DNA of 64,000 nt. Source: Octopus sinensis. Its lineage: Eukaryota. Below the pieces are notes generated by a model. The model made no database searches. It was not told the DNA's origin and worked only from the letters and a program-made list of their open reading frames with translations. The translations under genes and the position numbers were made by a program. Where the stretch lies: the NCBI RefSeq assembly GCF_006345805.1, contig NC_043010.1, forward strand, positions 34,782,001 to 34,846,000, read 5' to 3'. This document shows positions 12,736 through 64,000 of the stretch, in pieces (the stretch's first letter is position 1; every line of letters starts with the position of its first letter).

Positions 12736-12781
<46 letters not shown>

Positions 12782-13448: not shown

Positions 13449-13507
<59 letters not shown>

Positions 13508-13562
13508 TATACACACATATGCATATACATATATACACACACACGCGCGCACACACATATAT
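12735..13562. repeat. Large compound (TA)n/(TAYA)n microsatellite with ~30-bp ATGCAT-anchored minisatellite periodicity
   Basis: Unit catatatgcatatatacac(at)n repeats about 11 times in 12960-13430. Source of the long YI/CV/HI ORFs. Confidence 0.95.
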
Positions 13563-31292: not shown

Positions 31293-31378
31293 CTATGGTT
31301 ATCATAATATAAATGAGCAAGCATAAAACAAAAAAAAATGGAAAAACAAAAAGCAAAACAAGGAATAAAGTAACTTAC

Positions 31379-34300
31379 TTGGCTGATTGGATGTGACACC
31401 CATCCAGTTTGGACTTGATACTGAATCCTTAGTAAGACTGTATCCATTATGGGGCACCTGCCGTCCCTCAAGAGACTGTCGCCTTGGTGGGACTTGGGGA
31501 CTGCAGGGAGGAGAATGAAACGACACCTCCCTAGCAAAGCTTACGCTTTTCTTAGAACGCGCCATATCCTTCTCGCTCAGTGATGTGTTACTGGTTTCAT
31601 TGAGTATCACGTCGCGTGTTGGATTGGCTGACACGCTGTCGCTTCCACAATCACCCGACGGTAATACCTCCACAGGGGATGATGCTGCAACAGCATCAAA
31701 GTCTTTCGGGTAATCAATGGGTCCGTCAGCACCAGCCATTTGGTCTCGGTCACAGCCGTAAGAATGTCGGTGTGTAGTAGCAGCAGTGTTGTGTTTTTTA
31801 ATATTGTCAGTCCAGGGAGCCTTAGCGTAAGGGTCGGATAGGGATCGCTGACGTTTGCGCAGGCAGGATTTTAGGGGCCGTTTGTCAGGACAATAAGTTT
31901 CTGCTAAAGTCAAACCAGTATTTCGCATGCGAACACACTGGACAGCATCTTCTAGCCCTTCTTGTTTCTCATCAAATACCTGGTTGTCATAGTAACCATC
32001 TGTTCCTAACCTACAGTCACCATATTCCTCATTTTCTTCTAATTTGCCCTCCAAGGATTTCTCAGGTGAAGTAGGTGTCTTTTCTTCAGCAACACTATAC
32101 AAAGTTTCTGCTTGAGCCGAGTTGCCACTTGAGTTTGAGGAAGTACTAGCACTCCATCTCTTCCATGGCTTTTGACGGTTGTGTGCAGGGTGGCTTTCAT
32201 ACTGATACCGTTCATAGCGGCGGTCAACTGCTCGCGTCTTTGCTTGGGTCTTCTCCTCGGGCTGGCGTACTATACGCGGGAAGGTTTCAAAACCAGCGCT
32301 GTTGTAGACATATCTGGTATCCAACAACGCTGCACAGCATGGCAGTCTGGGAAAGCTTCCAAAGCTGCCATACCAATAGTCAAAGCAACCAGGATCAATT
32401 CCTGAAGATGTAGAACTAGTGCTAAATCCACTACTACTTGAGTGCCAATCAGCTCCACGACATGCTCCAATTGGTCGAAACATGCCTGAACGTCGGCTAC
32501 AGAAAGGCCCTGATATATGCATAGCTTCTGGTCTTTGGAGTTTCTTGAGTTCTTCTAGAGTTTCCTTAAAATTAGTATTTGGAGGTGCATTTGAATTAGT
32601 ATTTGGTCGGTGTATTCTAGGATTAATTAAAACAGGTTTATCAGTGGAGCGCCTCTGAAGTCTTTGCAAAGAAGGACTTGGAAGGGTAATAAAACTTAAG
32701 TCTGGCAAAGACCTGTGTGAATAAAATACTTCACGTGCTATTCTGGTGGACATGTGAAAAGCTTCTCTGGTTTTCGTTCTTTCAGATTTTGCCATCATGT
32801 GGCAATGACACTTTGGTATATCATAGCTTCCTTCAGAGGTTTGTTTACAGTTTCTCCTCAAACCTGATGCCATGGAGCGTTCATCTTCGAAAGACGTTTG
32901 GACTCCACAGTCTCTTGTAAGAGGTGGAAACTGGGCAGAAAAGTTCTTGGTTCCCAACCATACATTGACAGATTGAGGAGAGATAGCCGTTGCTTGGGTA
33001 CGTTTTCGGTTCAGGGGCACCTGACAACAAGCTGATCTCAATTCAAAAGAACTGAACCCTTCTCTACAATCAATGCAGTCTTTAACATCGTGAGCAGAAT
33101 TGATGTGGTGGTGATGATGATGGTCAAGATGGGATGAATTCTCCCAACCTGTCTGTTCACACTGTATAGCCAGATGAATACCATCTGCACCTTTCATATC
33201 ATTGATGTACAATTTATCATCACTGTTCACAGACCATTGACCACTACCAGGTCGACTAGATGTGCTACTATTTAAAGACCACCCAGGTATATGGATATCT
33301 GGAGACGATGCTTTTCCCATTGCTTTCATACGTTGGTATAGCTCCACTAATGTTGCTGAGTAACGCTTATTCTCAGCTTTCTCATCGTCCTCTTCTTCTT
33401 CTTCTTCTTCTTCTTCTTCTTCTTTGCTACTTTCTAACCCTTTTTTCTTCTCAGCAGCAACTTTCTGCCATGTCCGAAGACACAAGTCTGGCATACTGCA
33501 ACTTTTGCCACCACTGTTTTGATTAGAAAGTTGTTTCCCTTTACGATACATTGTCTTGATTTGCTTCCATGAAACCATGGTTTTGGGGCGAGAGTGCGAG
33601 CCAACTTTATTTTTGAGGGAACTAAATGTTTGCATGCTGCACCCATTTCTTGGCAAGCTGTGCGATATTATACGGCCTTGGCCACTACATTCTGACATCC
33701 CCGAAGAAGTAGACTCGTTTTCAGCCTCCTGATTGGTTTCAGGTAGTGATGTAAGTTGCCCAACGAAGCGTGTCTTTGCTGTAGTGTCTGATCGTAGAAG
33801 TCTTAATAAAGGTGGACATTTTGCTGATACTTCTCCATCTCGGCAGTAGTGGAAGCTGTTTGCAAAAACATCTTCCGCTCCTTCCCCAGAAGAGGTACAG
33901 TAGTGATGAACACCACTCTCATTATCATCAGACTCGTGTGTTCTCAAAGGCGTTAATGAAATTTCTGCTTCTGAACTGCTCGTCTTGCTCTGCGACCCAA
34001 CAAATGATAAGCAGTAATTTTCTTTGCGAGGGTAGCAGTCTATCACCAGCTTGCCATCAACTGACTGGTTAGGATCCATTGACGATTTACTAATTTGAAG
34101 GTCACCGGACTTGTGCCCGTGGTCCAGACTGTCGTTAAGAAGATGACAAGGAGGTGCCTCGCTGGTTGGTGTTGGGGTGAACAATGGATCACTACTAAGT
34201 TCTAACATTTCACTGGAGCACATCATGTCTCGCTCACTAGTTGAAATTTCCATTGAATTTTGGTTATCAGAAAACTCCAATTCGCATTGATCCTCGAAGG

Positions 34301-35057
34301 GCGCGGGGGTTGCGTCAGAGGAGGATTTTAACGATTCGAAGCTCAGATAACTACCATTCAGCATTTGAGGCAAAATAAACATCTCATCTCTTCCTATATC
34401 ATCAAGATTAATCTGTGGATTACTTAGATTTGGTTCAAACTGAACAGAGAAATCCTCATCATAAAAATACTCTAATGCGTCTTCCGGTGACTCATTACTT
34501 GTGCTTCCTGAACTTGTTTTCATTGGTTTCTGCTGTGTTGCCATTATGTATGAGTTGCAGAGTTCTGTTGTACCTTTGATTTTGTGATTTACTTCATTTG
34601 ATGAATATCCACTATCTGGCTCATAGTCAATGGGAGGTGACAGCTTTGTTGGAGATAGTTGTTTCCAAGTGACCAGCTGATTCTTATTCACTTCACTGTC
34701 TTCCCCCCATATTACACCACTGGCTGGGTTCTCCTCACCTGACGAACCACCACTACTACTACTACTGTGTGGAGACAGATTTTTTTGTTTGGTTGGCGAC
34801 AGATCTTTCCAGGTCAGCTTGCTGGGTACATTTGCGGCTGGTTCGGCACACACACCAGTTGACTTTTTTGTGCCGACAATGGAGTTATTCATCTCGGAAT
34901 CTAGGAAGTTAGAACCAGAAGTAAGAGCTTGTTTGTTTCCATGGTGATCGACAACATCAGGCATGGTGTTGGTTTGATTTTGATACATCTCATGGAAGTT
35001 CAGGCTAAAGCCCATATTGTTCCCTTCTTTAGCTGGAGATAGAATCCTCCATGGCTT
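31379..35057 (-). CDS. Giant internal coding exon (3,679 bp, 1,226 codons + 1 nt) of an unidentified, probably disordered Ser-rich scaffold/regulatory protein
   Basis: Stop-free for 3.7 kb in AT-rich DNA. Acceptor ttcttatttctctttttctttttctctttgcAG|AAG (phase 0); donor CCAA|GTAAGT (phase 1). Higher GC than flanks, no microsatellite origin. The supplied ORF start (35063) and tail (31302-31378) are intronic. Confidence 0.93.
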
Positions 35058-35398
35058 CTGCAAAGAGAAAAAGAAAAAGAGAAATAAGAATTAGTCTTTT
35101 AATAGAAAATATGATGACATTTATAAAATAAATGCATATATATGCAAACAGGTTCAATCACACACACATATATAAGCAACCATCATGTTGATAAATATCT
35201 ACATACATATCACTGCCTCTGCTAACAGCCATATATACCAATACCACAAACCAATCTGAATAGTGTAACTAGGATCACATTATCTAATGTATCTCCTTCT
35301 TTTAAGACAAAAATATGTGAAAAGGTGGGAAATTTGGGGAATGTGGCTGCTATTTTTAGCAGAGTGAGTGATAAAAAATTGAAAAAAAACTGGTAGCT

Positions 35399-38859: not shown

Positions 38860-40510
38860 TCTGTAGCACAGTAGCTGCCAAACTGAATTCAAGATGAATC
38901 ATCTCACCAAAAGAGATGTTTGTCACAGCAGGAAACAATCATTACAAAACAACAAACACAGACTCTTGAACATATTCATCAAGTTGCATATTAATGGCTG
39001 CTGTTGAAGAGGAAACTATTTGGCAATGGCCACGTCAACTATGCAAATGCTTTTCTAAGATAAAAATGTTGTAACTAGATTACATTACTGCTACTGCCAT
39101 TGTTATTATTATCATTATTATTTATTTATCATTATGTTGCAGCTCAGAGTAGTTGCAAAATTAATGATCTGTTGGATAAAATACCTTTACATAATTTAGC
39201 TGGGTTTTTGGGGTTTTTTTTTCTTAATCTTATGTTCACAGTACAAATTCTAGGGTGGTCAACGGCCAAATTCATATTTCCAAGGTAGGAAAAATTAAGT
39301 ACAAGACAAATACTTAGGTTGATTTAATTGACTGTACCCTTCACCCAAAATTTATTGTCTTACGCCAAAGTTAGAAGCTGAAATACATCATACACCATAA
39401 CAGTAACCTCCAGCATCACTAGAATATCTGCCAAGATATTCCAAGGTGACTATACACTTGTTCCATATTTTGTCCTAAGCTTATAGCTCTATAATAACTA
39501 ATAAATAGATCCAATTAAGAAAACTATATGAGAGGAGCTGAAAGAGAGGAGCTGGTTCATTATTATCTTCTCTTCGTGGATGCAAAAGATCATCAGCTTG
39601 GGGGTCAATAAACTGAACAAGGACATTCTGGATTGGATAAATGCAAGGAGTTGATTCAGGTCAGATAAGCAAACCAAGCAGACGATTTGGAACTCCACCA
39701 AAATGGGAGATAATACAAGAGTTGGGCAATTTCAAGTTCTACAGATACTTGGGTATGGGTGAAAGTAAAATTGTGTAAAAGCTGTGTGAAGAAGAATGAA
39801 AAATGAATATTTTGATGGAGGAAAAAAAAATCTAGAAATTCATTTCAGTAACAACAATATCTGTGTCATTAACAGGAGTGCCAGCTATAACTTATAGCTC
39901 TGCAGTACTGAAGAAGAATATAACAGATCTAGATTCAGGAAATCATTAAAATGGGAGATCTATAGAAAAATACTATATGTAGCTGTGTGGTAAGAAGTTA
40001 GCTTCCCAACCACATGGTTCTGAGTTCAGTCCCACTGTATGGAACCTTGGGTAAGTGTTTTCTAGTGTTGCCTCAGGCTGACGAATGCCTTATGAGTGGA
40101 TTTGGTAGGCAGAAACTGAAAGAAACCCATAATATATATATATATCATCATCATCATCATCGTCGTTTAGCGTCCGTTTTCCATGCTAGCATGCGTTGGA
40201 TGGTTCTACTGGGGTCTGTGAAGCCAGAAGGCTTCATCAGGCCCAGTCAAATCTGGCAGTGTTTCTACGGCTGGATGCCCTTCCTAACGCCAACCACTCC
40301 GTGAGTGTAGTGGGTGCTTTTTACGTGCCACCCGCACAGGTGCCAGACAGAGCTGGCAAACGGCCACGAACGGATGGTGCTTTTTATGTGCCACCGGCAC
40401 AAGGGCCAGGCGAGGCTGGCAACGGACACGAAACGGGGCGGTGCTGGCAACGGTCGCGAAACGGAAGGTTCTCTTACATGCCACCGGCACTGGTAACACA
40501 TTTGCAATTT

Positions 40511-40554
<44 letters not shown>

Positions 40555-41280
40555 GTGTGTGTGTGTGTCATTGTATCTATGTTTTTCAATTCATTTGATT
40601 AAAAATTCCAGCGTGGCCACAATCTAGTGACTGAAACAAGTAAAAAATAAAAAATATGGATCCCAATTACAATACACTCTTAAAAGACAAAATATTGGTA
40701 GAGGACTACTGAGCATTAAGAAGCAGTATAAGAGGGCTATCACCACTGTTGTCATTCTAACTCATAAAGAAAACCAGTTACATCCCTTCATAGATTATAA
40801 TTTTACAAAATGACAAATCAATTATATTCACAATAAAATTCTCTCGAGAAATTGAATTATTTTTTTGTACAGCTGTCTAAACCTAAAGCAACAGCACAGA
40901 CAGATATACTGATGGAATGTTAAGTCAACCATGGTGAACAACTATAAAGGTATGCCTTTACATGGCCATTATTTCCACAAACTGAATTCCTTATGTATTG
41001 TGGCCTAGATGAACAAATCCACCTTGAATGGAGCAACAGAAACAATAACAATTCATTATAGAGGAGCAGGCCATCTTGATATCAATAATTCTCACAATAT
41101 AAGTAACAGATGTTGCCTGTATGGTGTATTTGCTGAAACAATACACCATGCTGTATCAATTTGCTACAGTAGCTTTGGCAAAATGTACTTTAGGGCACAA
41201 CGATGAAGCAAAACTGTTTAAATATGCAGAGCTACCTTATTTCATCTTCTTTGAATCTTCACCTGTCTTAGAAAATGACA
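38860..41280 (+). mobile_element. Fragmented R4/Dong-type (RLE) non-LTR retrotransposon relic, interrupted by SINEs
   Basis: Colinear degenerate motifs: LAMA-VNYANAF (~39020), IFQGD (39436-50), YLLFVD (39564-81), GLDKC (39630-44), YRYLG (39740-54), GRGLLSI (40697-717), PLHG (~40955-66), EEQA (~41060), C...ETIHHAVSIC (41111-64), HN (41196-201). Confidence 0.8.
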
Positions 41281-45427: not shown

Positions 45428-46513
45428 CAGGCACCTGTGTGGTAAGAAGCTTGCTCCCAATCATATGGTTCCTAGTTCAGTCCCACTGCATGGTACCTTG
45501 AGCAAGTGTCTTCTACTATAACCTGAGGTTAACCAAAGCCTTGTGAGTGTATTTGGTAGGCAGAAACTGAAAGAGAGCTGTCATATTTCTATATAACGTG
45601 TGTGTGTGTATTTGTCCCCACTGATGTTGGTCTGTTTACATCCCTATAATTTGAGTGGTTGGACAAAAGTGACCAATAGAATATATACCAGGCCTAAAAA
45701 GGTAAAAAAAAAAAAAGTAGTGGAGTCAATTCCTTTGACTAAAAATTCAAGGCAGTACCCCAGCATGGCCAGAGTTTAATGACTGAATAAGTACAAGATA
45801 AAAGATACATACACACGCACACTGTCCATCTAGTCATTCTGTGTCCATGACCAAATCACATAACACAAAAATGGCCCAGTCCACTTAGCAGTAAATAAAA
45901 ACCAAGCATCACACTCTCTCCTTAAATAGTTTTCACAGAAAGCTTACCTCGATCATTCACTCAGTTGACTATTTATGGGAAAATTAAATACAACTCATTT
46001 AAAACCATTCCATGATCAGTTGATAAAACACTTATTTTTAAATGTATGTACATGCTGGCATGAAACTAAAATCCCTTGAGTCACTTTGTAACTTCTGATG
46101 ATTAATTGATTAAAAATAATAAAAAGTATAAACGTTTTGAGTTTAATATCCTGTTTGTACTAATCACATGTGTGTATATGTGTGTGTGCGTGGTGCACAG
46201 CATAGTTGTTAGGGTGTTGCACTCCTGATCAAAAGATTGTGGTTTTAATTCCTGGACTAAGCGATGCGTTGAGTTCTTGAGCAAAACACTCCATTTCATG
46301 TTGTTCCACTTCACTCAACTGGCAAAAATGAGTAAACCTGCAATAGAACGACATCCCATCGAGGTGGGGCATGTATATGCTATGGAATCTAGGAAACCAG
46401 CCTTATGAGCCTCTGGTTTGAGAAGGACTTGTGCTCCTTTTTTTTGTAATGTGTATATATTATTAGATAAATTGTATAGTATACACTTGGTAGCTTATAT
46501 GTATATATACATT

Positions 46514-48990: not shown

Positions 48991-49234
48991 CAGTGTTTCT
49001 CGACCATCTTTTACCTATGGACCCCTCTGATTCCTATTCTAATTGAATATACCCCGACAGCCATTTTGATGTTTTAAAAAAATCATAATATATTTTTATT
49101 ATTAAATATTATTAGGGATTGTATTTAAAAAAATTGTAAAAATATTGTTTGAATGGTAGAAGTATAACCAAATTTACTGCAGATAAATTTTAACAACAAA
49201 ATCTTATGTGGACCCCCTAGGTTGAGAACCACTG
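48991..49234. mobile_element. hAT (Charlie-like) MITE with intact 8-bp TSD
   Basis: TIRs cagtgtttctcgac / gttgagaaccactg; TSD ATCTATAT at 48983-90 and 49235-42. Confidence 0.9.
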
Positions 49235-49355
49235 ATCTATATATTCATCTGTCTATCCAGCCATAAATCTACCTTCCCATTGATTTAACTATAAATCAAC
49301 CTTTCTACCTTGCTAAACATCTTTGCTGAAATTCAATACAAGCTGAATATTGAAG

Positions 49356-52300
49356 TTCAGTCATTGGCGGTCTTCTTTTTTCTTTTTCCTCCTCTTCTTC
49401 TTCATATGCTAAAACTTGAAAACCGCCATTACTATTACTATTACGATTCTGCAATTTAAATTCCCAGTTCAACTACTTTCTTCTTCAATTTCAACTCCCG
49501 CTCGATGACCGCAGCAAGTTCTTAAAAAATTTATCTTACTATATTTTTTTTTTTTTTTTTTTCGTTGTTAATACGTTTATTCATACACTGTTACGAAAAT
49601 TTAACCTTTTTTAAGATACTTTCAAGCCTTCGCCATAACTTGATTTATCTTCCTATCTCTCTCTCTACAATATTTAACCGCAGGCTGCCTCAAGCCGTAA
49701 TCCCATCTTTTTCCCATCTTTCAGTCATTGGCGGTCTTCTTTTTTCTTTTCCTCCTCTTCTTCTTCATATGCTAAAACTTGAAAACCGCCATTACTATTA
49801 CTATTACGATTCTGCAATTTAAATTCCCAGTTCAACTACTTTCTCTTCAATTTCAACTCCCGCTCGATGACCGCAGCAAGTTCTTAAAAAAATCTTACTA
49901 TATTTTTTTTTTTTTTTTTTATTCGTTGTTAATACGTTTATTCATACACTGTTACGAAAAATTAACCTTTTTTAAGATACTTTCAAGCCTTCGCCATAAC
50001 TTGATTTATCTTCCTATCTCTCTCTCTACAATATTTAACCGCAGGCTGCCTCAAGCCGTAATCCCATCTTTTTCCCATCTTTCAGTCATTGGCGGTCTTC
50101 TTTTTTCTTTTTCCTCCTCTTCTTCTTCATATGCTAAAACTTGAAAACCGCCATTACTATTACTATTACGATTCTGCAATTTAAATTCCCAGTTCAACTA
50201 CTTTCTTCTTCAATTTCAACTCCCGCTCGATGACCGCAGCAAGTTCTTAAAAAATTTATCTTACTATATTTTTTTTTTTTTTTTTATTCGTTGTTAATAC
50301 GTTTATTCATACACTGTTACGAAAATTTAACCTTTTTTAAGATACTTTCAAGCCTTCGCCATAACTTGATTTATCTTCCTATCTCTCTCTCTACAATATT
50401 TAACCGCAGGCTGCCTCAAGCCGTAATCCCATCTTTTTCCCATCTTTCAGTCATTGGCGGTCTTCTTTTTTCTTTTCCTCCTCTTCTTCTTCATATGCTA
50501 AAACTTGAAAACCGCCATTACTATTACTATTACGATTCTGCAATTTAAATTCCCAGTTCAACTACTTTCTTCTTCAATTTCAACTCCCGCTCGATGACCG
50601 CAGCAAGTTCTTAAAAAATTTATCTTACTATATTTTTTTTATTCGTTGTTAATACGTTTATTCATACACTGTTACGAAAATTTAACCTTTTTTAAGATAC
50701 TTTCAAGCCTTCGCCATAACTTGATTTATCTTCCTATCTCTCTCTCTACAATATTTAACCGCAGGCTGCCTCAAGCCGTAATCCCATCTTTTTCCCATCT
50801 TTCAGTCATTGGCGGTCTTCTTTTTTCTTTTTCCTCCTCTTCTTCTTCATATGCTAAAACTTGAAAACCGCCATTACTATTACTATTACGATTCTGCAAT
50901 TTAAATTCCCAGTTCAACTACTTTCTTCTTCAATTTCAACTCCCGCTCGATGACCGCAGCAAGTTCTTAAAAAATTTATCTTACTATATTTTTTTATTCG
51001 TTGTTAATACGTTTATTCATACACTGTTACGAAAATTTAACCTTTTTTAAGATACTTTCAAGCCTTCGCCATAACTTGATTTATCTTCCTATCTCTCTCT
51101 CTACAATATTTAACCGCAGGCTGCCTCAAGCCGTAATCCCATCTTTTTCCCATCTTTCAGTCATTGGCGGTCTTCTTTTTTCTTTTTCCTCCTCTTCTTC
51201 TTCATATGCTAAAACTTGAAAACCGCCATTACTATTACTATTACGATTCTGCAATTTAAATTCCCAGTTCAACTACTTTCTTCTTCAATTTCAACTCCCG
51301 CTCGATGACCGCAGCAAGTTCTTAAAAAATTTATCTTACTATATTTTTTTTTTATTCGTTGTTAATACGTTTATTCATACACTGTTACGAAAATTTAACC
51401 TTTTTTAAGATACTTTCAAGCCTTCGCCATAACTTGATTTATCTTCCTATCTCTCTCTCTACAATATTTAACCGCAGGCTGCCTCAAGCCGTAATCCCAT
51501 CTTTTTCCCATCTTTCAGTCATTGGCGGTCTTCTTTTTTCTTTTTCCTCCTCTTCTTCTTCATATGCTAAAACTTGAAAACCGCCATTACTATTACTATT
51601 ACGATTCTGCAATTTAAATTCCCAGTTCAACTACTTTCTTCTTCAATTTCAACTCCCGCTCGATGACCGCAGCAAGTTCTTAAAAATTTATCTTACTATA
51701 TTTTTTTTTTTATTCGTTGTTAATACGTTTATTCATACACTGTTACGAAAATTTAACCTTTTTAAGATACTTTCAAGCCTTCGCCATAACTTGATTTATC
51801 TTCCTATCTCTCTCTCTACAATATTTAACCGCAGGCTGCCTCAAGCCGTAATCCCATCTTTTTCCCATCTTTCAGTCATTGGCGGTCTTCTTTTTTCTTT
51901 TTCCTCCTCTTCTTCTTCATATGCTAAAACTTGAAAACCGCCATTACTATTACTATTACGATTCTGCAATTTAAATTCCCAGTTCAACTACTTTCTTCTT
52001 CAATTTCAACTCCCGCTCGATGACCGCAGCAAGTTCTTAAAAAATTTATCTTACTATTTTTTTTTTTTTTATTCGTTGTTAATACGTTTATTCATACACT
52101 GTTACGAAAAATTAACCTTTTTTAAGATACTTTCAAGCCTTCGCCATAACTTGATTTATCTTCCTATCTCTCTCTCTACAATATTTAACCGCAGGCTGCC
52201 TCAAGCCGTAATCCCATCTTTTTCCCATCTTTCAGTCATTGGCGGTCTTCTTTTTTCTTTTTCCTCCTCTTCTTCTTCATATGCTAAAACTTGAAAACCG

Positions 52301-55300
52301 CCATTACTATTACTATTACGAAAACCGCATTACTATTACTATTACGATTCTGCAATTAAATTCCCAGTTCAACTACTTTCTTCTTCAATTTCAACTCCCG
52401 CTCGATGACCGCAGCAAGTTCTTAAAAAATTTATTACTACTTTTTTTTTTATTCGTTGTTAATACGTTTATTCATACACTGTTACGAAAATTTAACCTTT
52501 TTTAAGATACTTTCAAGCCTTCGCCATAACTTGATTTATCTTCCTATCTCTCTCTCTACAATATTTAACCGCAGGCTGCCTCAAGCCGTAATCCCATCTT
52601 TTTCCCATCTTTCAGTCATTGGCGGTCTTCTTTTTTCTTTTTCCTCCTCTTCTTCTTCATATGCTAAAACTTGAAAACCGCCATTACTTACTTATTACTA
52701 TTACTATTCGATTCTGCAATTTAAATTCCCAGTTCAACAACTACTTCTTCTTCAATTTCAACTCCCGCTCGATGACCGCAGCAAGTTCTTAAAAATTTAT
52801 CTTACTATATTTTTTTTTTTTTATCGTTGTTAATACGTTTATTCATACACTGTTACGAAAATTTAACCTTTTTTAAGATACTTTCAAGCCTTCGCCATAA
52901 CTTGATATCTTCCTATCTCTCTCTCTACAATATTTAACCGCAGGCTGCCTCAAGCCGTAATCCCATCTTTTTCCCATCTTTCAGTCATTGGCGGTCTTCT
53001 TTTTTTTTTCCTCCTCTTCTTCTTCATATGCTAAAACTTGAAAACCGCCATTACTATTACTATTGAAAACCGCCATTACTATTACTATTACGATTCTGCA
53101 ATTAAATTCCCAGTTCAACTACTTTCTTCTTCAATTTCAACTCCCGCTCGATGACCGCAGCAAGTTCTTAAAAAATTTATCTTACTATATTTTTTTTTTA
53201 TTCGTTGTTAATACGTTTATTCATACACTGTTACGAAAATTTAACCTTTTTTAAGATACTTTCAAGCCTTCGCCATAACTTGATTTATCTTCCTATCTCT
53301 CTCTCTACAATATTTAACCGCAGGCTGCCTCAAGCCGTAATCCCATCTTTTTCCCATCTTTCAGTCATTGGCGGTCTTCTTTTTTCTTTTTCCTCCTCTT
53401 CTTCTTCATATGCTAAAACTTGAAAACCGCCATTACTATTACTATTACGATTCTGCAATTTAAATTCCCAGTTCAACTACTTTCTTCTTCAATTTCAACT
53501 CCCGCTCGATGACCGCAGCAAGTTCTTAAAAAATTTATCTTACTATATTTTTTATTCGTTGTTAATACGTTTATTCATACACTGTTACGAAAATTTAACC
53601 TTTTTTTTTTTTTTTTTTTAAGATACTTTCAAGCCTTCGCCATAACTTGATTTATCTTCCTATCTCTCTCTCTACAATATTTAACCGCAGGCTGCCTCAA
53701 GCCGTAATCCCATCTTTTTCCCATCTTTCAGTCATTGGCGGTCTTCTTTTTTCTTTTTCCTCCTCTTCTTCTTCATATGCTAAAACTTGAAAACCGCCAT
53801 TACTATTACTATTACGATTCTGCAATTTAAATTCCCAGTTCAACTACTTTCTTCTTCAATTTCAACTCCCGCTCGATGACCGCAGCAAGTTCTTAAAAAA
53901 TTTATCTTACTATATTTTTTTTTTTATTCGTTGTTAATACGTTTATTCATACACTGTTACGAAAATTTAACCTTTTTTAAGATACTTTCAAGCCTTCGCC
54001 ATAACTTGATTTATCTTCCTATCTCTCTCTCTACAATATTTAACCGCAGGCTGCCTCAAGCCGTAATCCCATCTTTTTCCCATCTTTCAGTCATTGGCGG
54101 TCTTCTTTTTTCTTTTTCCTCCTCTTCTTCTTCATATGCTAAAACTTGAAAACCGCCATTACTATTACTATTACGATTCTGCAATTTAAATTCCCAGTTC
54201 AACTACTTTCTTCTTCAATTTCAACTCCCGCTCGATGACCGCAGCAAGTTCTTAAAAAATTTATCTTACTATATTTTTTTTTTTTTTCGTTGTTAATACG
54301 TTTATTCATACACTGTTACGAAAATTTAACCTTTTTTAAGATACTTTCAAGCCTTCGCCATAACTTGATTTATCTTCCTATCTCTCTCTCTACAATATTT
54401 AACCGCAGGCTGCCTCAAGCCGTAATCCCATCTTTTTCCCATCTTTCAGTCATTGGCGGTCTTCTTTTTTCTTTTTCCTCCTCTTCTTCTTCATATGCTA
54501 AAACTTGAAAACCGCCATTACTATTACTATTACGAACCGCCATACTATTACTATTACGATTGCAATTTAAATTCCCAGTTCAACTACTTTCTTCTTCAAT
54601 TTCAACTCCCGCTCGATGACCGCAGCAAGTTCTTAAAAAATTTATCTTACTATATTTTTTTTTATTCGTTGTTAATACGTTTATTCATACACTGTTACGA
54701 AAATTTAACCTTTTTTAAGATACTTTCAAGCCTTCGCCATAACTTGATTTATCTTCCTATCTCTCTCTCTACAATATTTAACCGCAGGCTGCCTCAAGCC
54801 GTAATCCCATCTTTTTCCCATCTTTCAGTCATTGGCGGTCTTCTTTTTTCTTTTTCCTCCTCTTCTTCTTCATATGCTAAAACTTGAAAACCGCCATTAC
54901 TATTACTATTACGATTCTGCAATTTAAATTCCCAGTTCAACTACTTTCTTCTTCAATTTCAACTCCCGCTCGATGACCGCAGCAAGTTCTTAAAAAATTT
55001 ATCTTACTATTTTTTTTTTTTTATTCGTTGTTAATACGTTTATTCATACACTGTTACGAAAATTTAACCTTTTTAAGATACTTTCAAGCCTTCGCCATAA
55101 CTTGATTTATCTTCCTATCTCTCTCTCTACAATATTTAACCGCAGGCTGCCTCAAGCCGTAATCCCATCTTTTTCCCATCTTTCAGTCATTGGCGGTCTT
55201 CTTTTTTCTTTTTCCTCCTCTTCTTCTTCATATGCTAAAACTTGAAAACCGCCATTACTATTACTATTACGATTCTGCAATTTAAATTCCCAGTTCAACT

Positions 55301-58300
55301 ACTTTCTTCTTCAATTTCAACTCCCGCTCGATGACCGCAGCAAGTTCTTAAAAAATTTATCTTACTATATTTTTTTTTTTTTTATTCGTTGTTAATACGT
55401 TTATTCATACACTGTTACGAAAATTTAACCTTTTTTAAGATACTTTCAAGCCTTCGCCATAACTTGATTTATCTTCCTATCTCTCTCTCTACAATATTTA
55501 ACCGCAGGCTGCCTCAAGCCGTAATCCCATCTTTTTCCCATCTTTCAGTCATTGGCGGTCTTCTTTTTTCTTTTTCCTCCTCTTCTTCTTCATATGCTAA
55601 AACTTGAAAACCGCCATTACTATTACTATTACGATTCTGCAATTTAAATTCCCAGTTCAACTACTTTCTTCTTCAATTTCAACTCCCGCTCGATGACCGC
55701 AGCAAGTTCTTAAAAAATTTATCTTACTATATTTTTTTTTATTCGTTGTTAATACGTTTATTCATACACTGTTACGAAAATTTAACCTTTTTTAAGATAC
55801 TTTCAAGCCTTCGCCATAACTTGATTTATCTTCCTATCTCTCTCTCTACAATATTTAACCGCAGGCTGCCTCAAGCCGTAATCCCATCTTTTTCCCATCT
55901 TTCAGTCATTGGCGGTCTTCTTTTTTCTTTTTCCTCCTCTTCTTCTTCATATGCTAAAACTTGAAAACCGCCATTACTATTACTATTACGATTCTGCAAT
56001 TTAAATTCCCAGTTCAACTACTTTCTTCTTCAATTTCAACTCCCGCTCGATGACCGCAGCAAGTTCTTAAAAAATTTATCTTACTATATTTTTTTTTTTT
56101 TTTTGTTTAATACGTTTATTCATACACTGTTACGAAAATTTAACCTTTTTTAAGATACTTTCAAGCCTTCGCCATAACTTGATTTATCTTCCTATCTCTC
56201 TCTCTACAATATTTAACCGCAGGCTGCCTCAAGCCGTAATCCCATCTTTTTCCCATCTTTCAGTCATTGGCGGTCTTCTTTTTTCTTTTTCCTCCTCTTC
56301 TTCTTCATATGCTAAAACTTGAAAACCGCCATACTATTACTATTACGAAAACGCCATTACTATTACTATTACGATTCTGCAATTTAAATTCCCAGTTCAA
56401 CTACTTTCTTCTTCAATTTCAACTCCCGCTCGATGACCGCAGCAAGTTCTTAAAAAATTTATCTTACTATATTTTTTTTTTCGTTCGTTGTTATACGTTT
56501 ATTCATACACTGTTACGAAAATTTAACCTTTTTTAAGATACTTTCAAGCCTTCGCCATAACTTGATTTATCTTCCTATCTCTCTCTCTACAATATTTAAC
56601 CGCAGGCTGCCTCAAGCCGTAATCCCATCTTTTTCCCATCTTTCAGTCATTGGCGGTCTTTTTTTTCTTTTTCCTCCTCTTCTTCTTCATATGCTAAAAC
56701 TTGAAAACCGCCATTACTATTACTATTACGATTCTGCAATTTAAATTCCCAGTTCAACTACTTTCTTCTTCAATTTCAACTCCCGCTCGATGACCGCAGC
56801 AAGTTCTTAAAAAATTTATCTTACTATATTTTTTTTTTTTTTCGTTGTTAATACGTTTATTCATACACTGTTACGAAAATTTAACCTTTTTTAAGATACT
56901 TTCAAGCCTTCGCCATAACTTGATTTATCTTCCTATCTCTCTCTCTACAATATTTAACCGCAGGCTGCCTCAAGCCGTAATCCCATCTTTTTCCCATCTT
57001 TCAGTCATTGGCGGTCTCTTTTTTCTTTTTCCTCCTCTTCTTCTTCATATGCTAAAACTTGAAAACCGCCATTACTATTACTATTACGATTCTGCAATTT
57101 AAATTCCCAGTTCAACTACTTTCTTCTTCAATTTCAACTCCCGCTCGATGATGACCGCAGCAAGTTCTTAAAAAATTTATCTTACTATTTTTTTTTTTTT
57201 TATTCGTTGTTAATACGTTTATTCATACACTGTTACGAAAATTTAACCTTTTTTAAGATACTTTCAAGCCTTCGCCATAACTTGATTTATCTTCCTATCT
57301 CTCTCTCTACAATATTTAACCGCAGGCTGCCTCAAGCCGTAATCCCATCTTTTTCCCATCTTTCAGTCATTGGCGGTCTTCTTTTTTCTTTTTCCTCCTC
57401 TTCTTCTTCATATGCTAAAACTTGAAAACCGCCATTACTATTACTATTACGATTCTGCAATTTAAATTCCCAGTTCAACTACTTTCTTCTTCAATTTCAA
57501 CTCCCGCTCGATGACCGCAGCAAGTTCTTAAAAAATTTATCTTACTATATTTTTTTTTTTTTATTCGTTGTTAATACGTTTATTCATACACTGTTACGAA
57601 AATTTAACCTTTTTTAAGATACTTTCAAGCCTTCGCCATAACTTGATTTATCTTCCTATCTCTCTCTCTACATATTTAACCGCAGGCTGCCTCAAGCCGT
57701 AATCCCATCTTTTTCCCATCTTTCAGTCATTGGCGGTCTTCTTTTTTCTTTTTCCTCCTCTTCTTCTTCATATGCTAAAACTTGAAAACGCCATTACTAT
57801 TACTATTACGATTCTGCAATTTAAATTCCCAGTTCAACTACTTTCTCTTCAATTTCATCAACTCCCGCTCGATGACCGCAGCAAGTTCTTAAAAAATTTA
57901 TCTTACTATATTTTTTTTTTTATTCGTTGTTAATACGTTTATTCATACACTGTTACGAAAATTTAACCTTTTTTAAGATACTTTCAAGCCTTCGCCATAA
58001 CTTGATTTATCTTCCTATCTCTCTCTCTACAATATTTAACCGCAGGCTGCCTCAAGCCGTAATCCCATCTTTTTCCCATCTTTCAGTCATTGGCGGTCTT
58101 CTTTTTTCTTTTTCCTCCTCTTCTTCTTCATATGCTAAAACTTGAAAACCGCCATTATATTACTATTACGAAAACCGCCATTACTATTACTATTACGATT
58201 CTGCAATTTAAATTCCCAGTTCAACTACTTTCTTCTTCAATTTCAACTCCCGCTCGATGACCGCAGCAAGTTCTTAAAAAATTTATCTTACTATTTTTTT

Positions 58301-61300
58301 TTTTTTTATTCGTTGTTAATACGTTTATTCATACACTGTTACGAAAATTTAACCTTTTTAAGATACTTTCAAGCCTTCGCCATAACTTGATTTATCTTCC
58401 TATCTCTCTCTCTACAATATTTAACCGCAGGCTGCCTCAAGCCGTAATCCCATCTTTTTCCCATCTTTCAGTCATTGGCGGTCTTCTTTTTTCTTTTTCC
58501 TCCTCTTCTTCTTCATATGCTAAAACTTGAAAACCGCCATTACTATTACTATTACGATTCTGCAATTTAAATTCCCAGTTCAACTACTTTCTTCTTCAAT
58601 TTCAACTCCCGCTCGATGACCGCAGCAAGTTCTTAAAAAATATTATATTTTTTTTTTTTTTTATTCGTTGTTAATACGTTTATTCATACACTGTTACGAA
58701 AATTTAACCTTTTTTAAGATACTTTCAAGCCTTCGCCATAACTTGATTTATCTTCCTATCTCTCTCTCTACAATATTTAACCGCAGGCTGCCTCAAGCCG
58801 TAATCCCATCTTTTTCCCATCTTTCAGTCATTGGCGGTCTTCTTTTTTTTTTTCCTCTCTTCTTCTTCATATGCTAAAACTTGAAAACCGCCATTACTAT
58901 TACTATTACGATTCTGCAATTTAAATTCCCAGTTCAACTACTTTCTTCTTCAATTTCAACTCCCGCTCGATGACCGCAGCAAGTTCTTAAAAAATTTATC
59001 TTACTATATTTTTTTTTTTTTTCGTTGTTAATACGTTTATTCATACACTGTTACGAAAATTTAACCTTTTTTAAGATACTTTCAAGCCTTCGCCATAACT
59101 TGATTTATCTTCCTATCTCTCTCTCTACAATATTTAACCGCAGGCTGCCTCAAGCCGTAATCCCATCTTTTTCCCATCTTTCAGTCATTGGCGGTCTTCT
59201 TTTTTCTTTTTCCTCCTCTTCTTCTTCATATGCTAAAACTTGAAAACCGCCATTACTATTACTATTACGATTCTGCAATTTAAATTCCCAGTTCAACTAC
59301 TTTCTTCTTCAATTTCAACTCCCGCTCGATGACCGCAGCAAGTTCTTAAAAAATTTATCTTACTATATTTTTTTTTTTTTATTCGTTGTTAATACGTTTA
59401 TTCATACACTGTTACGAAAATTTAACCTTTTTTAAGATACTTTCAAGCCTTCGCCATAACTTGATTTATCTTCCTATCTCTCTCTCTACAATATTTAACC
59501 GCAGGCTGCCTCAAGCCGTAATCCCATCTTTTTCCCATCTTTCAGTCATTGGCGGTCTTCTTTTTTCTTTTCCTCCTCTTCTTCTTCATATGCTAAAACT
59601 TGAAAACCGCCATTACTATTACTATTACGATTCTGCAATTTAAATTCCCAGTTCAACTACTTTCTTCTTCAATTTCAACTCCCGCTCGATGACCGCAGCA
59701 AGTTCTTAAAAAATTTATCTTACTATATTTTTTTTTTTTTATTCGTTGTTAATACGTTTATTCATACACTGTTACGAAAATTTAACCTTTTTTAAGATAC
59801 TTTCAAGCCTTCGCCATAACTTGATTTATCTTCCTATCTCTCTCTCTACAATATTTAACCGCAGGCTGCCTCAAGCCGTAATCCCATCTTTTCCCATCTT
59901 TCAGTCATTGGCGGTCTTCTTTTTTCTTTTTCCTCCTCTTCTTCTTCATATGCTAAAACTTGAAAACCGCCATTACTATTACTATTACGAAAAACCGCCA
60001 TTACTATTACTATTACGATTCTGCAATTTAAATTCCCAGTTCAACTTACTTCTTCAATTTCAACTCCCGCTCGATGACCGCAGCAAGTTCTTAAAAAATT
60101 TATCTTACTATATTTTTTTTTTTTTTATTCGTGTTAATACGTTTATTCATACACTGTTACGAAAATTTAACCTTTTTTAAGATACTTTCAAGCCTTCGCC
60201 ATAACTTGATTTATCTTCCTATCTCTCTCTCTACAATATTTAACCGCAGGCTGCCTCAAGCCGTAATCCCATCTTTTTCCCATCTTTCAGTCATTGGCGG
60301 TCTTCTTTTTTCTTTTTCCTCCTCTTCTTCTTCATATGCTAAAACTTGAAAACCGCCATTACTATTACTATTACGATTCTGCAATTTAAATCCCAGTTCA
60401 ACTACTTTCTTCTTCAATTTCAACTCCCGCTCGATGACCGCAGCAAGTTCTTAAAAAATTTATCTTACTATATTTTTTTTTTTTTATTCGTTGTTAATAC
60501 GTTTATTCATACACTGTTACGAAAATTTAACCTTTTTTAAGATACTTTCAAGCCTTCGCCATAACTTGATTTATCTTCCTATCTCTCTCTCTACAATATT
60601 TAACCGCAGGCTGCCTCAAGCCGTAATCCCATCTTTTTCCCATCTTTCAGTCATTGGCGGTCTTCTTTTTTCTTTTTCCTCCTCTTCTTCTTCATATGCT
60701 AAAACTTGAAAACCGCCATTACTATTACTATTACGATTCTGCAATTTAAATTCCCAGTTCAACTACTTTCTTCTTCAATTTCAACTCCCGCTCGATGACC
60801 GCAGCAAGTTCTTAAAAAATTTATCTTACTATATTTTTTTTTTTTTTATTCGTTGTTAATACGTTTATTCATACACTGTTACGAAAATTTAACCTTTTTA
60901 AGATACTTTCAAGCCTTCGCCATAACTTGATTTATCTTCCTATCTCTCTCTCTACAATATTTAACCGCAGGCTGCCTCAAGCCGTAATCCCATCTTTTTC
61001 CCATCTTTCAGTCATTGGCGGTCTTCTTTTTTTTTCTTTTTCCTCCTCTTCTTCTTCATATGCTAAAACTTGAAAACCGCCATTACTATTACTATTACGA
61101 AAACCGCCATTACTATTACTATTACGATTCTGCAATTTAAATTCCCAGTTCAACTACTTTCTTCTTCAATTTCAACTCCCGCTCGATGACCGCAGCAAGT
61201 TCTTAAAAAATTTATCTTACTACTATATTTTTTTTTTTTTTCGTTGTTAATACGTTTATTCATACACTGTTACGAAAATTTAACCTTTTTTAAGATACTT

Positions 61301-64000
61301 TCAAGCCTTCGCCATAACTTGATTTATCTTCCTATCTCTCTCTCTACAATATTTAACCGCAGGCTGCCTCAAGCCGTAATCCCATCTTTTTCCCATCTTT
61401 CAGTCATTGGCGGTCTTCTTTTTTCTTTTTCCTCCTCTTCTTCTTCATATGCTAAAACTTGAAAACCGCCATTACTATTACTATTACGATTCTGCAATTT
61501 AAATTCCCAGTTCAACTACTTTCTTCTTCAATTTCAACTCCCGCTCGATGACCGCAGCAAGTTCTTAAAAAATTTATCTTACTATATTTTTTTTTTTTTT
61601 TATTCGTTGTTAATACGTTTATTCATACACTGTTACGAAAAATTAACCTTTTTAAGATACTTTCAAGCCTTCGCCATAACTTGATTTATCTTCCTATCTC
61701 TCTCTCTACAATATTTAACCGCAGGCTGCCTCAAGCCGTAATCCCATCTTTTTCCCATCTTTCAGTCATTGGCGGTCTTCTTTTTTCTTTTTCCTCCTCT
61801 TCTTCTTCATATGCTAAAACTTGAAAACCGCCATTACTATTACTATTACGATTCTGCAATTTAAATTCCCAGTTCAACTACTTTCTCTTCTTCAATTTCA
61901 ACTCCCGCTCGATGACCGCAGCAAGTTCTTAAAAAATTATCTTACTATATTTTTTTTTTTTTTATTCGTTGTTAATACGTTTATTCATACACTGTTACGA
62001 AAATTTAACCTTTTTTAAGATACTTTCAAGCCTTCGCCATAACTTGATTTATCTTCCTATCTCTCTCTCTACAATATTTAACCGCAGGCTGCCTCAAGCC
62101 GTAATCCCATCTTTTTCCCATCTTTCAGTCATTGGCGGTCTTCTTTTTTTTTTTCTTTTTCCTCCTCTTCTTCTTCATATGCTAAAACTTGAAAACCGCC
62201 ATTACTATTACTATTACGATTCTGCAATTTAAATTCCCAGTTCAACTACTTTCTTCTTCAATTTCAACTCCCGCTCGATGACCGCAGCAAGTTCTTAAAA
62301 AATTTATCTTACTATATTTTTTATTCGTTGTTAATACGTTTATTCATACACTGTTACGAAAATTTAACCTTTTTTAAGATACTTTCAAGCCTTCGCCATA
62401 ACTTGATTTATCTTCCTATCTCTCTCTCTACAATATTTAACCGCAGGCTGCCTCAAGCCGTAATCCCATCTTTTTCCCATCTTTCAGTCATTGGCGGTCT
62501 TCTTTTTTTTTTTCTTTTTCCTCCTCTTCTTCTTCATATGCTAAAACTTGAAAACCGCCATTACTATTACTATTACGATTCTGCAATTTAAATTCCCAGT
62601 TCAACTACTTTCTTCTTCAATTTCAACTCCCGCTCGATGACCGCAGCAAGTTCTTAAAAAATTTATCTACTATATTTTTTTTTTTTTTTATTCGTTGTTA
62701 ATACGTTTATTCATACACTGTTACGAAAATTTAACCTTTTTTAAGATACTTTCAAGCCTTCGCCATAACTTGATTTATCTTCCTATCTCTCTCTCTACAA
62801 TATTTAACCGCAGGCTGCCTCAAGCCGTAATCCCATCTTTTTCCCATCTTTCAGTCATTGGCGGTCTTCTTTTTTTTTTCTTTTTCCTCCTCTTCTTCTT
62901 CATGCTAAAACTTGAAAACCGCCATTACTATTACTATTACGAAAAACCGCCATTACTATTACTATTACGATTCTGCAATTTAAATTCCCAGTTCAACTAC
63001 TTTCTTCTTCAATTTCAACTCCCCCTCGATGACCGCAGCAAGTTCTTAAAAAATTTATCTTACTATATTTTTTTTTTTTTTTTATTCGTTGTTAATACGT
63101 TTATTCATACACTGTTACGAAAATTTAACCTTTTTTAAGATACTTTCAAGCCTTCGCCATAACTTGATTTATCTTCCTACTCTCTCTCTACAATATTTAA
63201 ACCGGCAGGCTGCCTCAAGCCGTAATCCCATCTTTTTCCCATCTTTCAGTCATTGCGGTCTGCGTCTTTTTTCTTTTTTTCCTCCTCTTCTTCTTCTTCA
63301 TATGCTAAAACTTGAAAACCGCCATTACTATTACTATTACGATTCTGCAATTTAAATTCCCAGTTCAACTACTTTCTTCTTCAATTTCAACTCCCGCTCG
63401 ATGACCGCAGCAAGTTCTTAAAAAATTTATCTTACTATATTTTTTTTTTTTTTTATTCGTTGTTAATACGTTATTCATACACTGTTACGAAAATTTAACC
63501 TTTTTTAAGATACTTTCAAGCCTTCGCCATAACTTGATTTATCTTCCTATCTCTCTCTCTACAATATTTAACCGCAGGCTGCCTCAAGCCGTAATCCCAT
63601 CTTTTTCCCATCTTCAGTGGATTGCGTCTTCTTTTTTCTTTTTCCTCCTCTTCTTCTTCATATGCTAAAACTTGAAAACCGCCATTACTATTACTATTAC
63701 GATTCTGCAATTTAAATTCCCAGTTCAACTACTTTCTTCTTCAATTTCAACTCCCGCTCGATGACCGCAGCAAGTTCTTAAAAAATTTATCTTACTATAT
63801 TTTTTTTTTTTTTTTATTCGTTGTTAATACGTTTATTCATACACTGTTACGAAAATTTAACCTTTTTTAAGATACTTTCAAGCCTTCGCCATAACTTGAT
63901 TTATCTTCCTATCTCTCTCTCTACAATATTTAACCGCAGGCTGCCTCAAGCCGTAATCCCATCTTTTTCCCATCTTTCAGTCATTGGCGGTCTTCTTTTT
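49356..64000. repeat. Homogeneous ~360-bp tandem satellite array (40 complete units + start of 41st; continues past window)
   Basis: tcattggcgg unit starts at 49361, 49725, 50086, 50451, 50806, 51161, 51519 ... 63981. Units differ almost only in poly-T length, small indels and a ~27-bp internal duplication in 8 units. Confidence 0.99.

What the first reader, a model, noticed from the sequence alone, without database searches (positions are those of the whole stretch)
49356..64000. Near-identical ~360-bp satellite array (>14.6 kb) beside or inside a protein-coding gene
Forty units have almost no substitutions, against heavily decayed surroundings (seen). The ~360-bp period equals about two nucleosome repeats, as in several centromeric/heterochromatic satellites (established analogy). 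The giant exon needs an upstream exon and I found none convincing in 35-49 kb, so the array may be intronic (inference). I do not recognise the monomer as any rRNA, tRNA, snRNA, SL RNA or histone repeat. It is a candidate undescribed satellite family: centromere-associated, regulatory, or a rolling-circle element array.
Basis: partly seen in the sequence, partly recalled or inferred. Interest (0 to 1): 0.75.

Follow-up and report, generated by a model that had tools for sequence, protein, structure and literature searches.

The report
Young intronic satellite array in octopus
A real run of 40 near-identical 361-bp non-coding repeats sits inside the first intron of an Octopus sinensis RUN-domain gene; it looks like an ordinary young satellite-type tandem array, notable mainly because octopus satellites are hardly described and because it has escaped the CpG loss seen in the DNA around it.

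Summary
Window 49356-64000 contains 40 head-to-tail monomers (consensus 361 bp) plus a 23-bp stub, and the array runs off the window end. I counted 15 substitutions in 14,620 bp (0.10%). The 110 indel events are mostly homopolymer-length changes and may be long-read noise. Part of the array has a 5-monomer higher-order pattern, marked by a 25-28-bp internal duplication.

The window is Octopus sinensis. The "giant exon" (31379-35057, minus) is exon 2 of LOC115219087, a RUN-domain protein whose gene model spans 187.5 kb. Neither alternative first coding exon is in the window, so the array very probably lies in intron 1.

The monomer has no long ORF with homologues, no Rfam match, no tRNA, no ribozyme, no miRNA-like hairpin, and no dispersed copy in the other 49 kb. 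On the gene's sense strand each unit carries AATAAA, 16 nt, then an A-run of 6-19. This hints at a retroposed ancestor.

CpG observed/expected is 1.5 in the array and 0.29 in the flanks, which argues for recent origin or absence of germline methylation.

Nothing supports a centromeric or regulatory role. I could not test genome-wide copy number or read depth.

Verdict: a new member of a known kind, of modest interest.

The parts
49356..64000 (-). Tandem array of 40 monomers plus a 23-bp stub, consensus 361 bp. It continues past the window end. Strand is given as the one carrying AATAAA and the A-run, which is also the sense strand of the host gene.
   Evidence: TRF; monomer splitting and alignment. 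GC skew is -0.48 and AT skew -0.27 across the array.
59182..59542 (-). Reference A-type monomer (m28), identical to the consensus.
   Evidence: 0 substitutions and 0 indels against the consensus.
59902..60287 (-). B-type monomer (m30, 386 bp) carrying the 28-bp internal duplication AAAACCGCCATTACTATTACTATTACGA at 59963-60018. B-type monomers recur every 5th unit (m15, m20, m25, m30, then m33, m38), giving a higher-order repeat of about 1.82 kb.
   Evidence: TRF 25-28-bp sub-hits spaced 1811-1843 bp apart. Insertion list. Lag-5 mean edit distance is 10.4, against 13.2-20.4 at the other lags tested.
59368..59380 (-). A-run on the minus strand (T-run on plus), 13 nt in this monomer and 6-19 nt across the array.
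   Evidence: Run lengths per monomer.
59397..59402 (-). AATAAA hexamer on the minus strand, 16 nt upstream of the A-run (GTATGAATAAACGTATTAACAACGAAT-An).
   Evidence: Motif positions in the consensus; sequence read directly.
59189..59252 (.). 11-nt inverted repeat (TGGCGGTCTTC / GAAAACCGCCA) enclosing a spacer of about 42 nt. Most of the spacer is a pure polypyrimidine (plus) / polypurine (minus) tract.
   Evidence: the repeat finder I2/I3. It is the best local hairpin on the minus strand, -18 kcal/mol with a very large loop.
49326..49360 (.). Proximal array junction. The unique flank ends at 49355. A 13-nt inverted repeat (CTGAAATTCAATA / TATTGAAGTTCAG) straddles the first bases of the array.
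   Evidence: Sequence; the repeat finder I7.
31379..35057 (-). Giant internal exon (exon 2, residues 27-1253) of LOC115219087, a RUN-domain protein. It has a CAG acceptor at 35058-35060 and a GTAAGT donor at 31373-31378.
   Evidence: tblastn. 100% identical to the O. sinensis proteins XP_029645013.1 and XP_029645014.1. Splice sites read directly.

Best explanation
This is a young, non-coding, satellite-type tandem array of 361-bp monomers, at least 40 copies and at least 14.6 kb. It lies inside intron 1 of the Octopus sinensis RUN-domain gene LOC115219087.

It most likely grew and stays uniform through DNA-level mechanisms: unequal crossing-over, replication slippage and gene conversion between misaligned repeats. 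A variant monomer with a 25-28-bp internal duplication was fixed in a 5-monomer block, and that block was then amplified in turn (a higher-order repeat).

The unit encodes no protein and no recognisable RNA gene. I regard it as a passenger of the intron with no sequence-specific function.

The founding unit may have been a retroposed, polyadenylated sequence. On the gene's sense strand each monomer ends with AATAAA, 16 nt, then an A-run. Its undepleted CpG content shows that it has not shared the long history of CpG decay of the surrounding gene body.

Shown: the array, its homogeneity, the higher-order pattern, the absence of coding or known-RNA content, and the CpG contrast. Inferred: the intronic position, the amplification mechanism, the young age, the retroposed origin and the lack of function.
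For: - Array and homogeneity: (15 substitutions in 14,620 bp).
- Higher-order pattern aaaaaaaaBbBbaaBaaaaBaaaaBaaaaBaaBaaabBba, with an edit-distance minimum at lag 5. TRF sub-hits are spaced about 1.82 kb apart.
- No coding or RNA function detected. Only spurious TTG ORFs of 82-147 aa occur on the T/C-rich strand, and the 121-aa one has no homologue among 5.8 billion proteins. The minus strand has stops in all frames. There is no Rfam family and no tRNA or mitochondrial tRNA. Fold z-scores are only -1.4 and -1.7. There is no miRNA-like hairpin and no internal sub-repeat.
- Host and position. The exon is 100% identical to O. sinensis XP_029645013.1. The gene model spans 187,543 bp. Neither first coding exon is in the window. 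Minus-strand ORF pieces between the exon and the array have no Pfam domain. The exon has a canonical acceptor.
- Youth. CpG o/e is 1.52 and CpG/GpC 0.93 in the array, against 0.29 for both in the 49-kb flank. Only 1 of the 15 substitutions is a CpG>TpG change. In octopus, methylation is concentrated on the bodies of a subset of genes, and satellites are the repeat class with relatively higher methylation (PMC9476566). An old array in this position would therefore be expected to have lost its CpGs.
- Retroposed origin. AATAAA lies 16 nt before a variable A-run in every monomer, on the same strand as the host gene.
Against: - Only one locus and one assembly could be examined.
- Extreme homogeneity can be inflated when long reads are polished across near-identical repeats, and copy number may be wrong.
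- The intronic position is inferred from the absence of the first exons in the window and from the size of the gene model, not seen directly.
- AATAAA within 10-30 nt of an A-run has roughly a 7% chance expectation on this A-rich strand (my estimate from base composition). No target-site duplications, no Pol III boxes and no dispersed copies were found, so the retroposed origin is only suggestive.
- High CpG retention could instead reflect protection from methylation or selection, which would point to a function I cannot exclude.
Confidence: 0.7

Rival explanations
1. The array is one locus of a genome-wide satellite family that forms centromeric or pericentromeric heterochromatin in Octopus. 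This intronic array would be an outlying copy, or the array is far larger than the window shows.
For: Monomer size (about 360 bp), extreme homogeneity and higher-order organisation are typical of centromeric satellites. The array runs off the window, so its size is unknown. Cephalopod centromere sequences are undescribed in the literature I could search.
Against: The array starts 14.3 kb from a conserved coding exon and lies within a gene model of 133-188 kb that is preserved in three Octopus species. No monomer-like sequence occurs elsewhere in the window. There is no direct evidence of any kind for centromere proteins or heterochromatin.
Confidence: 0.12
2. The array is made of transposable-element units: serial head-to-tail insertions of a poly(A) retroposon or SINE, or a rolling-circle (Helitron-type) read-through array.
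For: Each unit carries AATAAA plus a variable-length A-run. Variable tail length is what independent retropositions would give.
Against: - All units are full length and essentially identical, with no 5' truncations and no target-site duplications.
- The 5-monomer higher-order pattern indicates block amplification of DNA rather than serial insertion.
- There is no tRNA-like head.
- No dispersed or solo copy occurs in 49 kb of TE-rich flank.
- The monomer has no GC-rich terminal hairpin of the Helitron kind; its best hairpins are weak.
- No ORF of 150 aa or more, and no Pfam domain in minus-strand pieces, lies between the exon and the array.
Confidence: 0.08
3. The array, or at least its length and uniformity, is an assembly artefact: over-expansion, mis-join or consensus homogenisation of a shorter or more variable repeat.
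For: The indel spectrum is dominated by homopolymer-length changes typical of long-read error. The last monomers (63249-63977) are visibly noisier. The related O. vulgaris assembly is known to be built from ONT R9.4.1 reads with short-read polishing (PMC10700109). That the O. sinensis assembly is PacBio-based rests on the title of Li et al. 2020 as cited in that paper.
Against: A regular 5-monomer pattern of a specific 25-28-bp duplication, together with a sharp unique junction, is hard to produce by mis-assembly. Assemblers more often collapse such arrays than expand them (general knowledge).
Confidence: 0.07
4. The array is functional. It could be a CpG-rich, unmethylated macrosatellite acting as a regulatory or insulator element for the host gene. 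Alternatively it could be a tandem set of small TATA-to-poly(A) transcription units producing a novel non-coding RNA or piRNA precursors.
For: - CpG density is 3.4 per 100 bp, against 0.9 in the flanks, with no CpG decay.
- Each unit has a TATA-like ATATAG just after the A-run and an AATAAA about 340 nt downstream on the same strand.
- Two CGCCAT motifs occur per monomer; this is the YY1/Pho-type core, recalled from memory.
- A polypurine tract is flanked by an inverted repeat.
Against: There is no structural signal above shuffled controls, no known RNA family, and no conservation data. Every motif is short enough to occur by chance. Youth alone explains the CpG retention.
Confidence: 0.05

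Closest known systems
Animal satellite DNA with higher-order repeat structure (for example alpha satellite, and the bivalve satellites described in PMC5537241 and PMC5874043)
   Same: Head-to-tail monomers of a few hundred bp, very high intra-array identity, a multi-monomer higher-order period, and no coding capacity.
   Different: Only one euchromatic, intronic array of at least 14.6 kb was seen. Genome-wide abundance, heterochromatin and centromere association are all untested. There is no sequence similarity to anything I could search.
Intronic or genic macrosatellites and VNTR-type arrays in animal genomes (for example the human macrosatellites DXZ4 and D4Z4; from general knowledge)
   Same: A locus-specific array of long units, richer in CpG than its surroundings, embedded in or next to a gene, and probably variable in copy number.
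   Different: The known macrosatellites have kb-scale units, often containing an ORF or defined protein-binding sites (CTCF/YY1). Here the unit is 361 bp with no ORF and no demonstrated binding site.
Satellites derived from retroposons or SINE/LINE tails (general knowledge)
   Same: Each unit carries a poly(A)-signal-like hexamer followed by an A-run of variable length.
   Different: No Pol III promoter boxes, no tRNA-related head, no target-site duplications, and no dispersed parent copies in the window.
Ribozyme-bearing tandem repeats (retrozymes; the newt, schistosome and cricket satellites with hammerhead ribozymes; general knowledge)
   Same: Tandem units of about 300-400 bp in an invertebrate genome.
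   Different: No hammerhead or other self-cleaving ribozyme was found by the Rfam scan at E<=10, and the monomer has no CUGAUGA core.

Membership tests
Satellite / tandem-repeat DNA | Head-to-tail direct repeats of one unit, far beyond chance | tested here: met
   TRF score 24,962, 40.1 copies; 40 monomers aligned.
Satellite / tandem-repeat DNA | Non-coding monomer | tested here: met
   Stops in all minus-strand frames. The + strand has only spurious TTG ORFs, and the 121-aa one searched has no homologue.
Satellite / tandem-repeat DNA | High copy number genome-wide or at multiple loci (a family, not a private array) | not testable with these tools
   No eukaryotic genome DNA collection is available. 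Exact 22- and 24-mers are absent from the metagenome, prokaryote-genome and (24-mer only) viral collections, as expected.
Centromeric satellite | Association with CENP-A or the primary constriction; long gene-free arrays | tested here: inconclusive
   The array begins 14.3 kb from a conserved exon and lies within a 187.5-kb gene model, which argues against. Its full length and chromatin state are unknown.
Tandem RNA-gene arrays (5S, snRNA, SL RNA, tRNA) | Monomer contains a recognisable structured RNA gene | tested here: not met
   Rfam gives 0 hits at gathering score over the window, and only one chance-level hit at E=9.3 in 2.5 kb of array. ARAGORN finds 0 genes, including in mitochondrial mode.
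Histone or other tandem protein-gene arrays | Conserved ORF in each unit | tested here: not met
   No homologue for the 121-aa ORF that spans about one monomer. The other ORFs are frame-shifted versions of the same T/C-rich strand.
Ribozyme-bearing satellites / retrozymes | Self-cleaving ribozyme motif in each unit | tested here: not met
   No ribozyme family at E<=10.
Poly(A) retroposon / SINE-derived repeat | 3' A-tail preceded by a poly(A) signal | tested here: met
   AATAAA, 16 nt, then A6-19 in every monomer on the minus strand.
Poly(A) retroposon / SINE-derived repeat | Dispersed copies with target-site duplications; Pol III head for SINEs | tested here: not met
   No copy in 1-49355 and no tRNA-like head. 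Target-site duplications cannot be assessed inside an array.
Helitron / rolling-circle arrays | Terminal GC-rich hairpin near a CTRR 3' end; Rep/helicase element nearby | tested here: inconclusive
   Only weak 4- to 11-bp stems in the monomer. No ORF of 150 aa or more lies at 35-49 kb, and minus-strand pieces have no Pfam hit. Plus-strand pieces were not scanned, and the distal side of the array is outside the window.
Tandem miRNA cluster | Pre-miRNA-like hairpin of about 60-80 nt in each unit | tested here: not met
   The best single hairpin is -18 kcal/mol per 80 nt, with a loop of about 40 nt.

The most novel reading that the evidence does not exclude
The 361-bp unit is the monomer of a previously undescribed Octopus satellite family that either marks centromeres, whose sequence in cephalopods is unknown, or acts as an unmethylated CpG-rich macrosatellite controlling the large RUN-domain gene that hosts it. 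In the second case the 40 or more sense-oriented AATAAA/A-run units would influence transcription through intron 1.
Probability: 0.1. Interest if true: 0.6.

Novelty: new member of a known kind. Interest (0 to 1): 0.28.

Why it matters
Cephalopod satellite DNA and centromere sequences are almost undescribed. My literature searches found no octopus satellite monomer, and two recent Octopus genome and repeat papers do not mention satellites at all. A clean monomer with higher-order structure is therefore a useful probe for FISH and genome-wide mapping. The sharp CpG contrast (o/e 1.5 in the array, 0.29 in the flanks) offers a natural test of how quickly gene-body methylation erodes newly arisen sequence in an invertebrate. 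On present evidence, however, this is an ordinary young tandem array with no demonstrated function.

Tried and rejected
- Known RNA genes: Rfam at gathering score over the whole window and at E<=10 over 2.5 kb of array, plus ARAGORN in standard and mitochondrial modes. Nothing found.
- Coding repeat: no long ORF on the minus strand. The + strand ORFs are compositional artefacts, and the 121-aa ORF has no homologue.
- Structured RNA or miRNA cluster: fold z-scores of -1.4 and -1.7, and no pre-miRNA-like hairpin.
- Internal sub-repeats within the monomer: none.
- Dispersed TE origin: no copy elsewhere in the window.
- NUMT idea, prompted by the strong strand skew and undepleted CpG: no mitochondrial tRNA and no protein homology, so dropped.
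- CENP-B-box-like motif: checked by eye only, no match.
- Copies elsewhere: exact monomer words searched in the metagenome, GTDB-genome and IMG/VR collections, all negative. These collections do not hold octopus DNA, so the result is uninformative.
- Orthologous loci: fetching them failed because all three gene models exceed the 100-kb retrieval limit.
- Literature: six searches, including literal monomer strings, found no description. The O. vulgaris repeat re-annotation paper holds no sequences.
I redid it with stop-to-stop pieces for the minus strand only.
Full report

Yes. Tandem Repeats Finder reports a single array from 49356 to the window end at 64000: period 359, 40.1 copies, 93% matches, 4% indels, score 24,962. 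Splitting on a conserved anchor gives 40 complete monomers of 355-397 bp and a 23-bp stub at the window edge.

- The majority-rule consensus is 361 bp. Monomer m28 (59182-59542) is identical to it.
- Against the consensus there are only 15 substitutions in 14,620 bp (0.10%), but 110 indel events.
- Most indels change the length of homopolymers or short repeats. The main T-run varies from 6 to 19 nt. After homopolymer collapse, 17 of 40 monomers are identical to the consensus.
- The + strand is strongly C/T-rich (GC skew -0.48, AT skew -0.27).
- The proximal boundary is sharp. Nothing resembling the monomer occurs in the other 49 kb.

**2. Substructure**

Eight monomers (m9, m11, m15, m20, m25, m30, m33, m38) carry an 18-28-bp internal duplication of GAAAACCGCCATTACTATTACTATTAC (25-28 bp in seven of them).

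- Written by type, the array reads aaaaaaaaBbBbaaBaaaaBaaaaBaaaaBaaBaaabBba.
- From m13 onward, the mean edit distance between monomers is lowest at lag 5: 10.4, against 13.2-20.4 at the other lags.
- So a monomeric domain (m1-m8) is followed by a domain with a 5-monomer higher-order repeat of about 1.82 kb. One unit is shortened (m30 to m33). This is the footprint of unequal exchange between misaligned repeats.

**3. Where is it?**

The 1253-aa ORF at 31302-35063 (minus) matches a 2054-aa RUN-domain protein (Pfam PF02759 precomputed on the full protein).

- The exon proper is 31379-35057, residues 27-1253. It has a polypyrimidine tract and CAG acceptor, and a GTAAGT donor.
- It is 100% identical to Octopus sinensis XP_029645013.1 and XP_029645014.1. 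It differs at 2 residues from O. vulgaris CAI9732881.1 and at 13 from O. bimaculoides. The window is therefore O. sinensis.
- The gene models span 187,543 bp (O. sinensis), 170,166 bp (O. vulgaris) and 133,481 bp (O. bimaculoides).
- The two alternative first coding exons (MGIVFITHEDVKSVSRQTPWRLLAGD and MDCNENSTEKHNGHVITSK) are absent from the window.
- Minus-strand ORF pieces between the exon and the array hit no Pfam family. This also excludes the methyltransferase gene that lies upstream in O. vulgaris.
- Since the gene is on the minus strand, its first exons must lie beyond 64000. The array therefore lies in intron 1. This is an inference. I could not retrieve the DNA, because all three gene ranges exceed the tool's 100-kb limit.

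**4. What is the monomer?**

- Not a protein repeat. All minus-strand frames are closed. The + strand ORFs of 82-147 aa exist only because that strand is poor in A and G, and the 121-aa ORF spanning a whole unit has no homologue among 5.8 billion clusters.
- Not a known RNA. There is no Rfam family at gathering score in the window, and only one chance-level hit (E=9.3) in a permissive scan of 2.5 kb of array. There is no tRNA in standard or mitochondrial mode.
- Not a structured RNA. Single-strand folds are barely better than shuffles (z = -1.4 and -1.7). The best local hairpin is an 11-bp stem around a loop of about 40 nt, mostly polypurine, which is not miRNA-like.
- There is no internal sub-periodicity.

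The one suggestive feature is on the minus strand, the sense strand of the host gene. Every unit reads ...GTATGAATAAACGTATTAACAACGAAT(A)6-19 TATAGTAAGATAAAT.... That is a canonical poly(A) signal, 16 nt, then an A-run of variable length. This is what a retroposed polyadenylated RNA or the tail of a poly(A) retroposon would leave. It is weak evidence, for three reasons. I estimate about a 7% chance expectation from base composition. There are no target-site duplications, no Pol III boxes and no dispersed copies. And the higher-order pattern shows that the array grew by DNA-level block amplification rather than by serial insertion.

**5. Age and methylation**

CpG observed/expected is 1.52 in the array (CpG/GpC 0.93). 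It is 0.29 across the 49-kb flank (range 0.16-0.38 per 5 kb, and 0.51 in the block holding the exon).

- In O. bimaculoides fewer than 10% of CpGs are methylated. Methylated sites cluster on the bodies, introns included, of a subset of broadly expressed genes. TEs are essentially unmethylated, and satellites are the repeat class with relatively higher methylation (PMC9476566).
- The flank values fit a germline-methylated gene body. An array that had resided there for long should have decayed too.
- Instead, only one of the 15 substitutions is a CpG>TpG change.
- Together with 0.1% divergence, this argues that the array, and probably its founding sequence at this site, is recent. The alternative, protection from methylation, cannot be excluded.

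**6. Technical caveats**

The indel spectrum looks like long-read error. The last monomers (63249-63977) are noisier. The sister O. vulgaris assembly is ONT R9.4.1 polished with short reads (PMC10700109). The O. sinensis assembly is cited there as PacBio-based. Polishing across near-identical repeats can both leave indels and erase true substitutions. The exact copy number, the homopolymer lengths and some of the homogeneity should therefore be treated as provisional. The regular 25-28-bp duplication pattern and the sharp unique junction are unlikely to be artefacts.

**7. Interpretation**

The best-supported reading (about 0.7) is a young, non-coding, satellite-type tandem array. It was amplified and homogenised by unequal exchange or gene conversion inside intron 1 of a RUN-domain gene, possibly seeded by a retroposed sequence, and has no demonstrated function.

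The rivals are:
- an outlier of a genome-wide or centromeric family (0.12);
- a TE-unit array (0.08);
- an assembly artefact in length or uniformity (0.07);
- a functional CpG-rich macrosatellite or small transcription-unit array (0.05).

The 'two nucleosomes' remark is only an analogy.

**8. Novelty**

I found no description of this or any octopus satellite monomer in the searchable literature, including searches for literal monomer strings. It is best filed as a new member of a known kind. Interest is modest (0.28). It would rise if genome-wide mapping showed a chromosome-by-chromosome distribution, or if the array proved unmethylated and transcribed.

Noticed in passing
window 48991-49234: A MITE of about 244 bp with terminal inverted repeats CAGTGTTTCTCGACC / GGTTGAGAACCACTG, flanked on both sides by the 8-bp direct repeat ATCTATAT. 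This is a hAT-type target-site duplication. It lies 120 bp from the array start.
   Followed up: partly
window 49326-49360: A 13-nt inverted repeat (CTGAAATTCAATA / TATTGAAGTTCAG) straddles the junction between the unique flank and the first monomer. It could have promoted the initial duplication, or it could be chance.
   Followed up: no
window 1-49355: The whole flank is severely CpG-depleted (o/e 0.16-0.38 per 5 kb; 0.51 in the exon block) while GpC is about 1.0. This is consistent with germline gene-body methylation of this locus (PMC9476566).
   Followed up: partly
window 31379-35057 (minus): The giant exon encodes a long region that looks low in complexity and matches no Pfam domain. It contains a 12-residue glutamate run followed by DDE, and an HHHHHH run, upstream of the RUN domain, which is encoded outside the window. 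Homologues at 28-31% identity (38% over a shorter stretch in Solemya) occur across gastropods and bivalves.
   Followed up: partly
window 40004-40627 and 45455-45595: A SINE-like element with a 63-bp internal tandem duplication (40313-40432). A second, 81%-identical 141-nt copy of its neighbourhood lies 5.4 kb away.
   Followed up: no
window 12739-13566: A very long compound (TA)n/(CA)n microsatellite of about 830 bp. It generates several spurious ORFs of 158-335 aa on both strands.
   Followed up: no
gene models outside the window: The orthologous gene range differs by 54 kb between O. sinensis (187.5 kb) and O. bimaculoides (133.5 kb), and by 17 kb from O. vulgaris (170.2 kb). Whether the array contributes to this could not be checked.
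   Followed up: no
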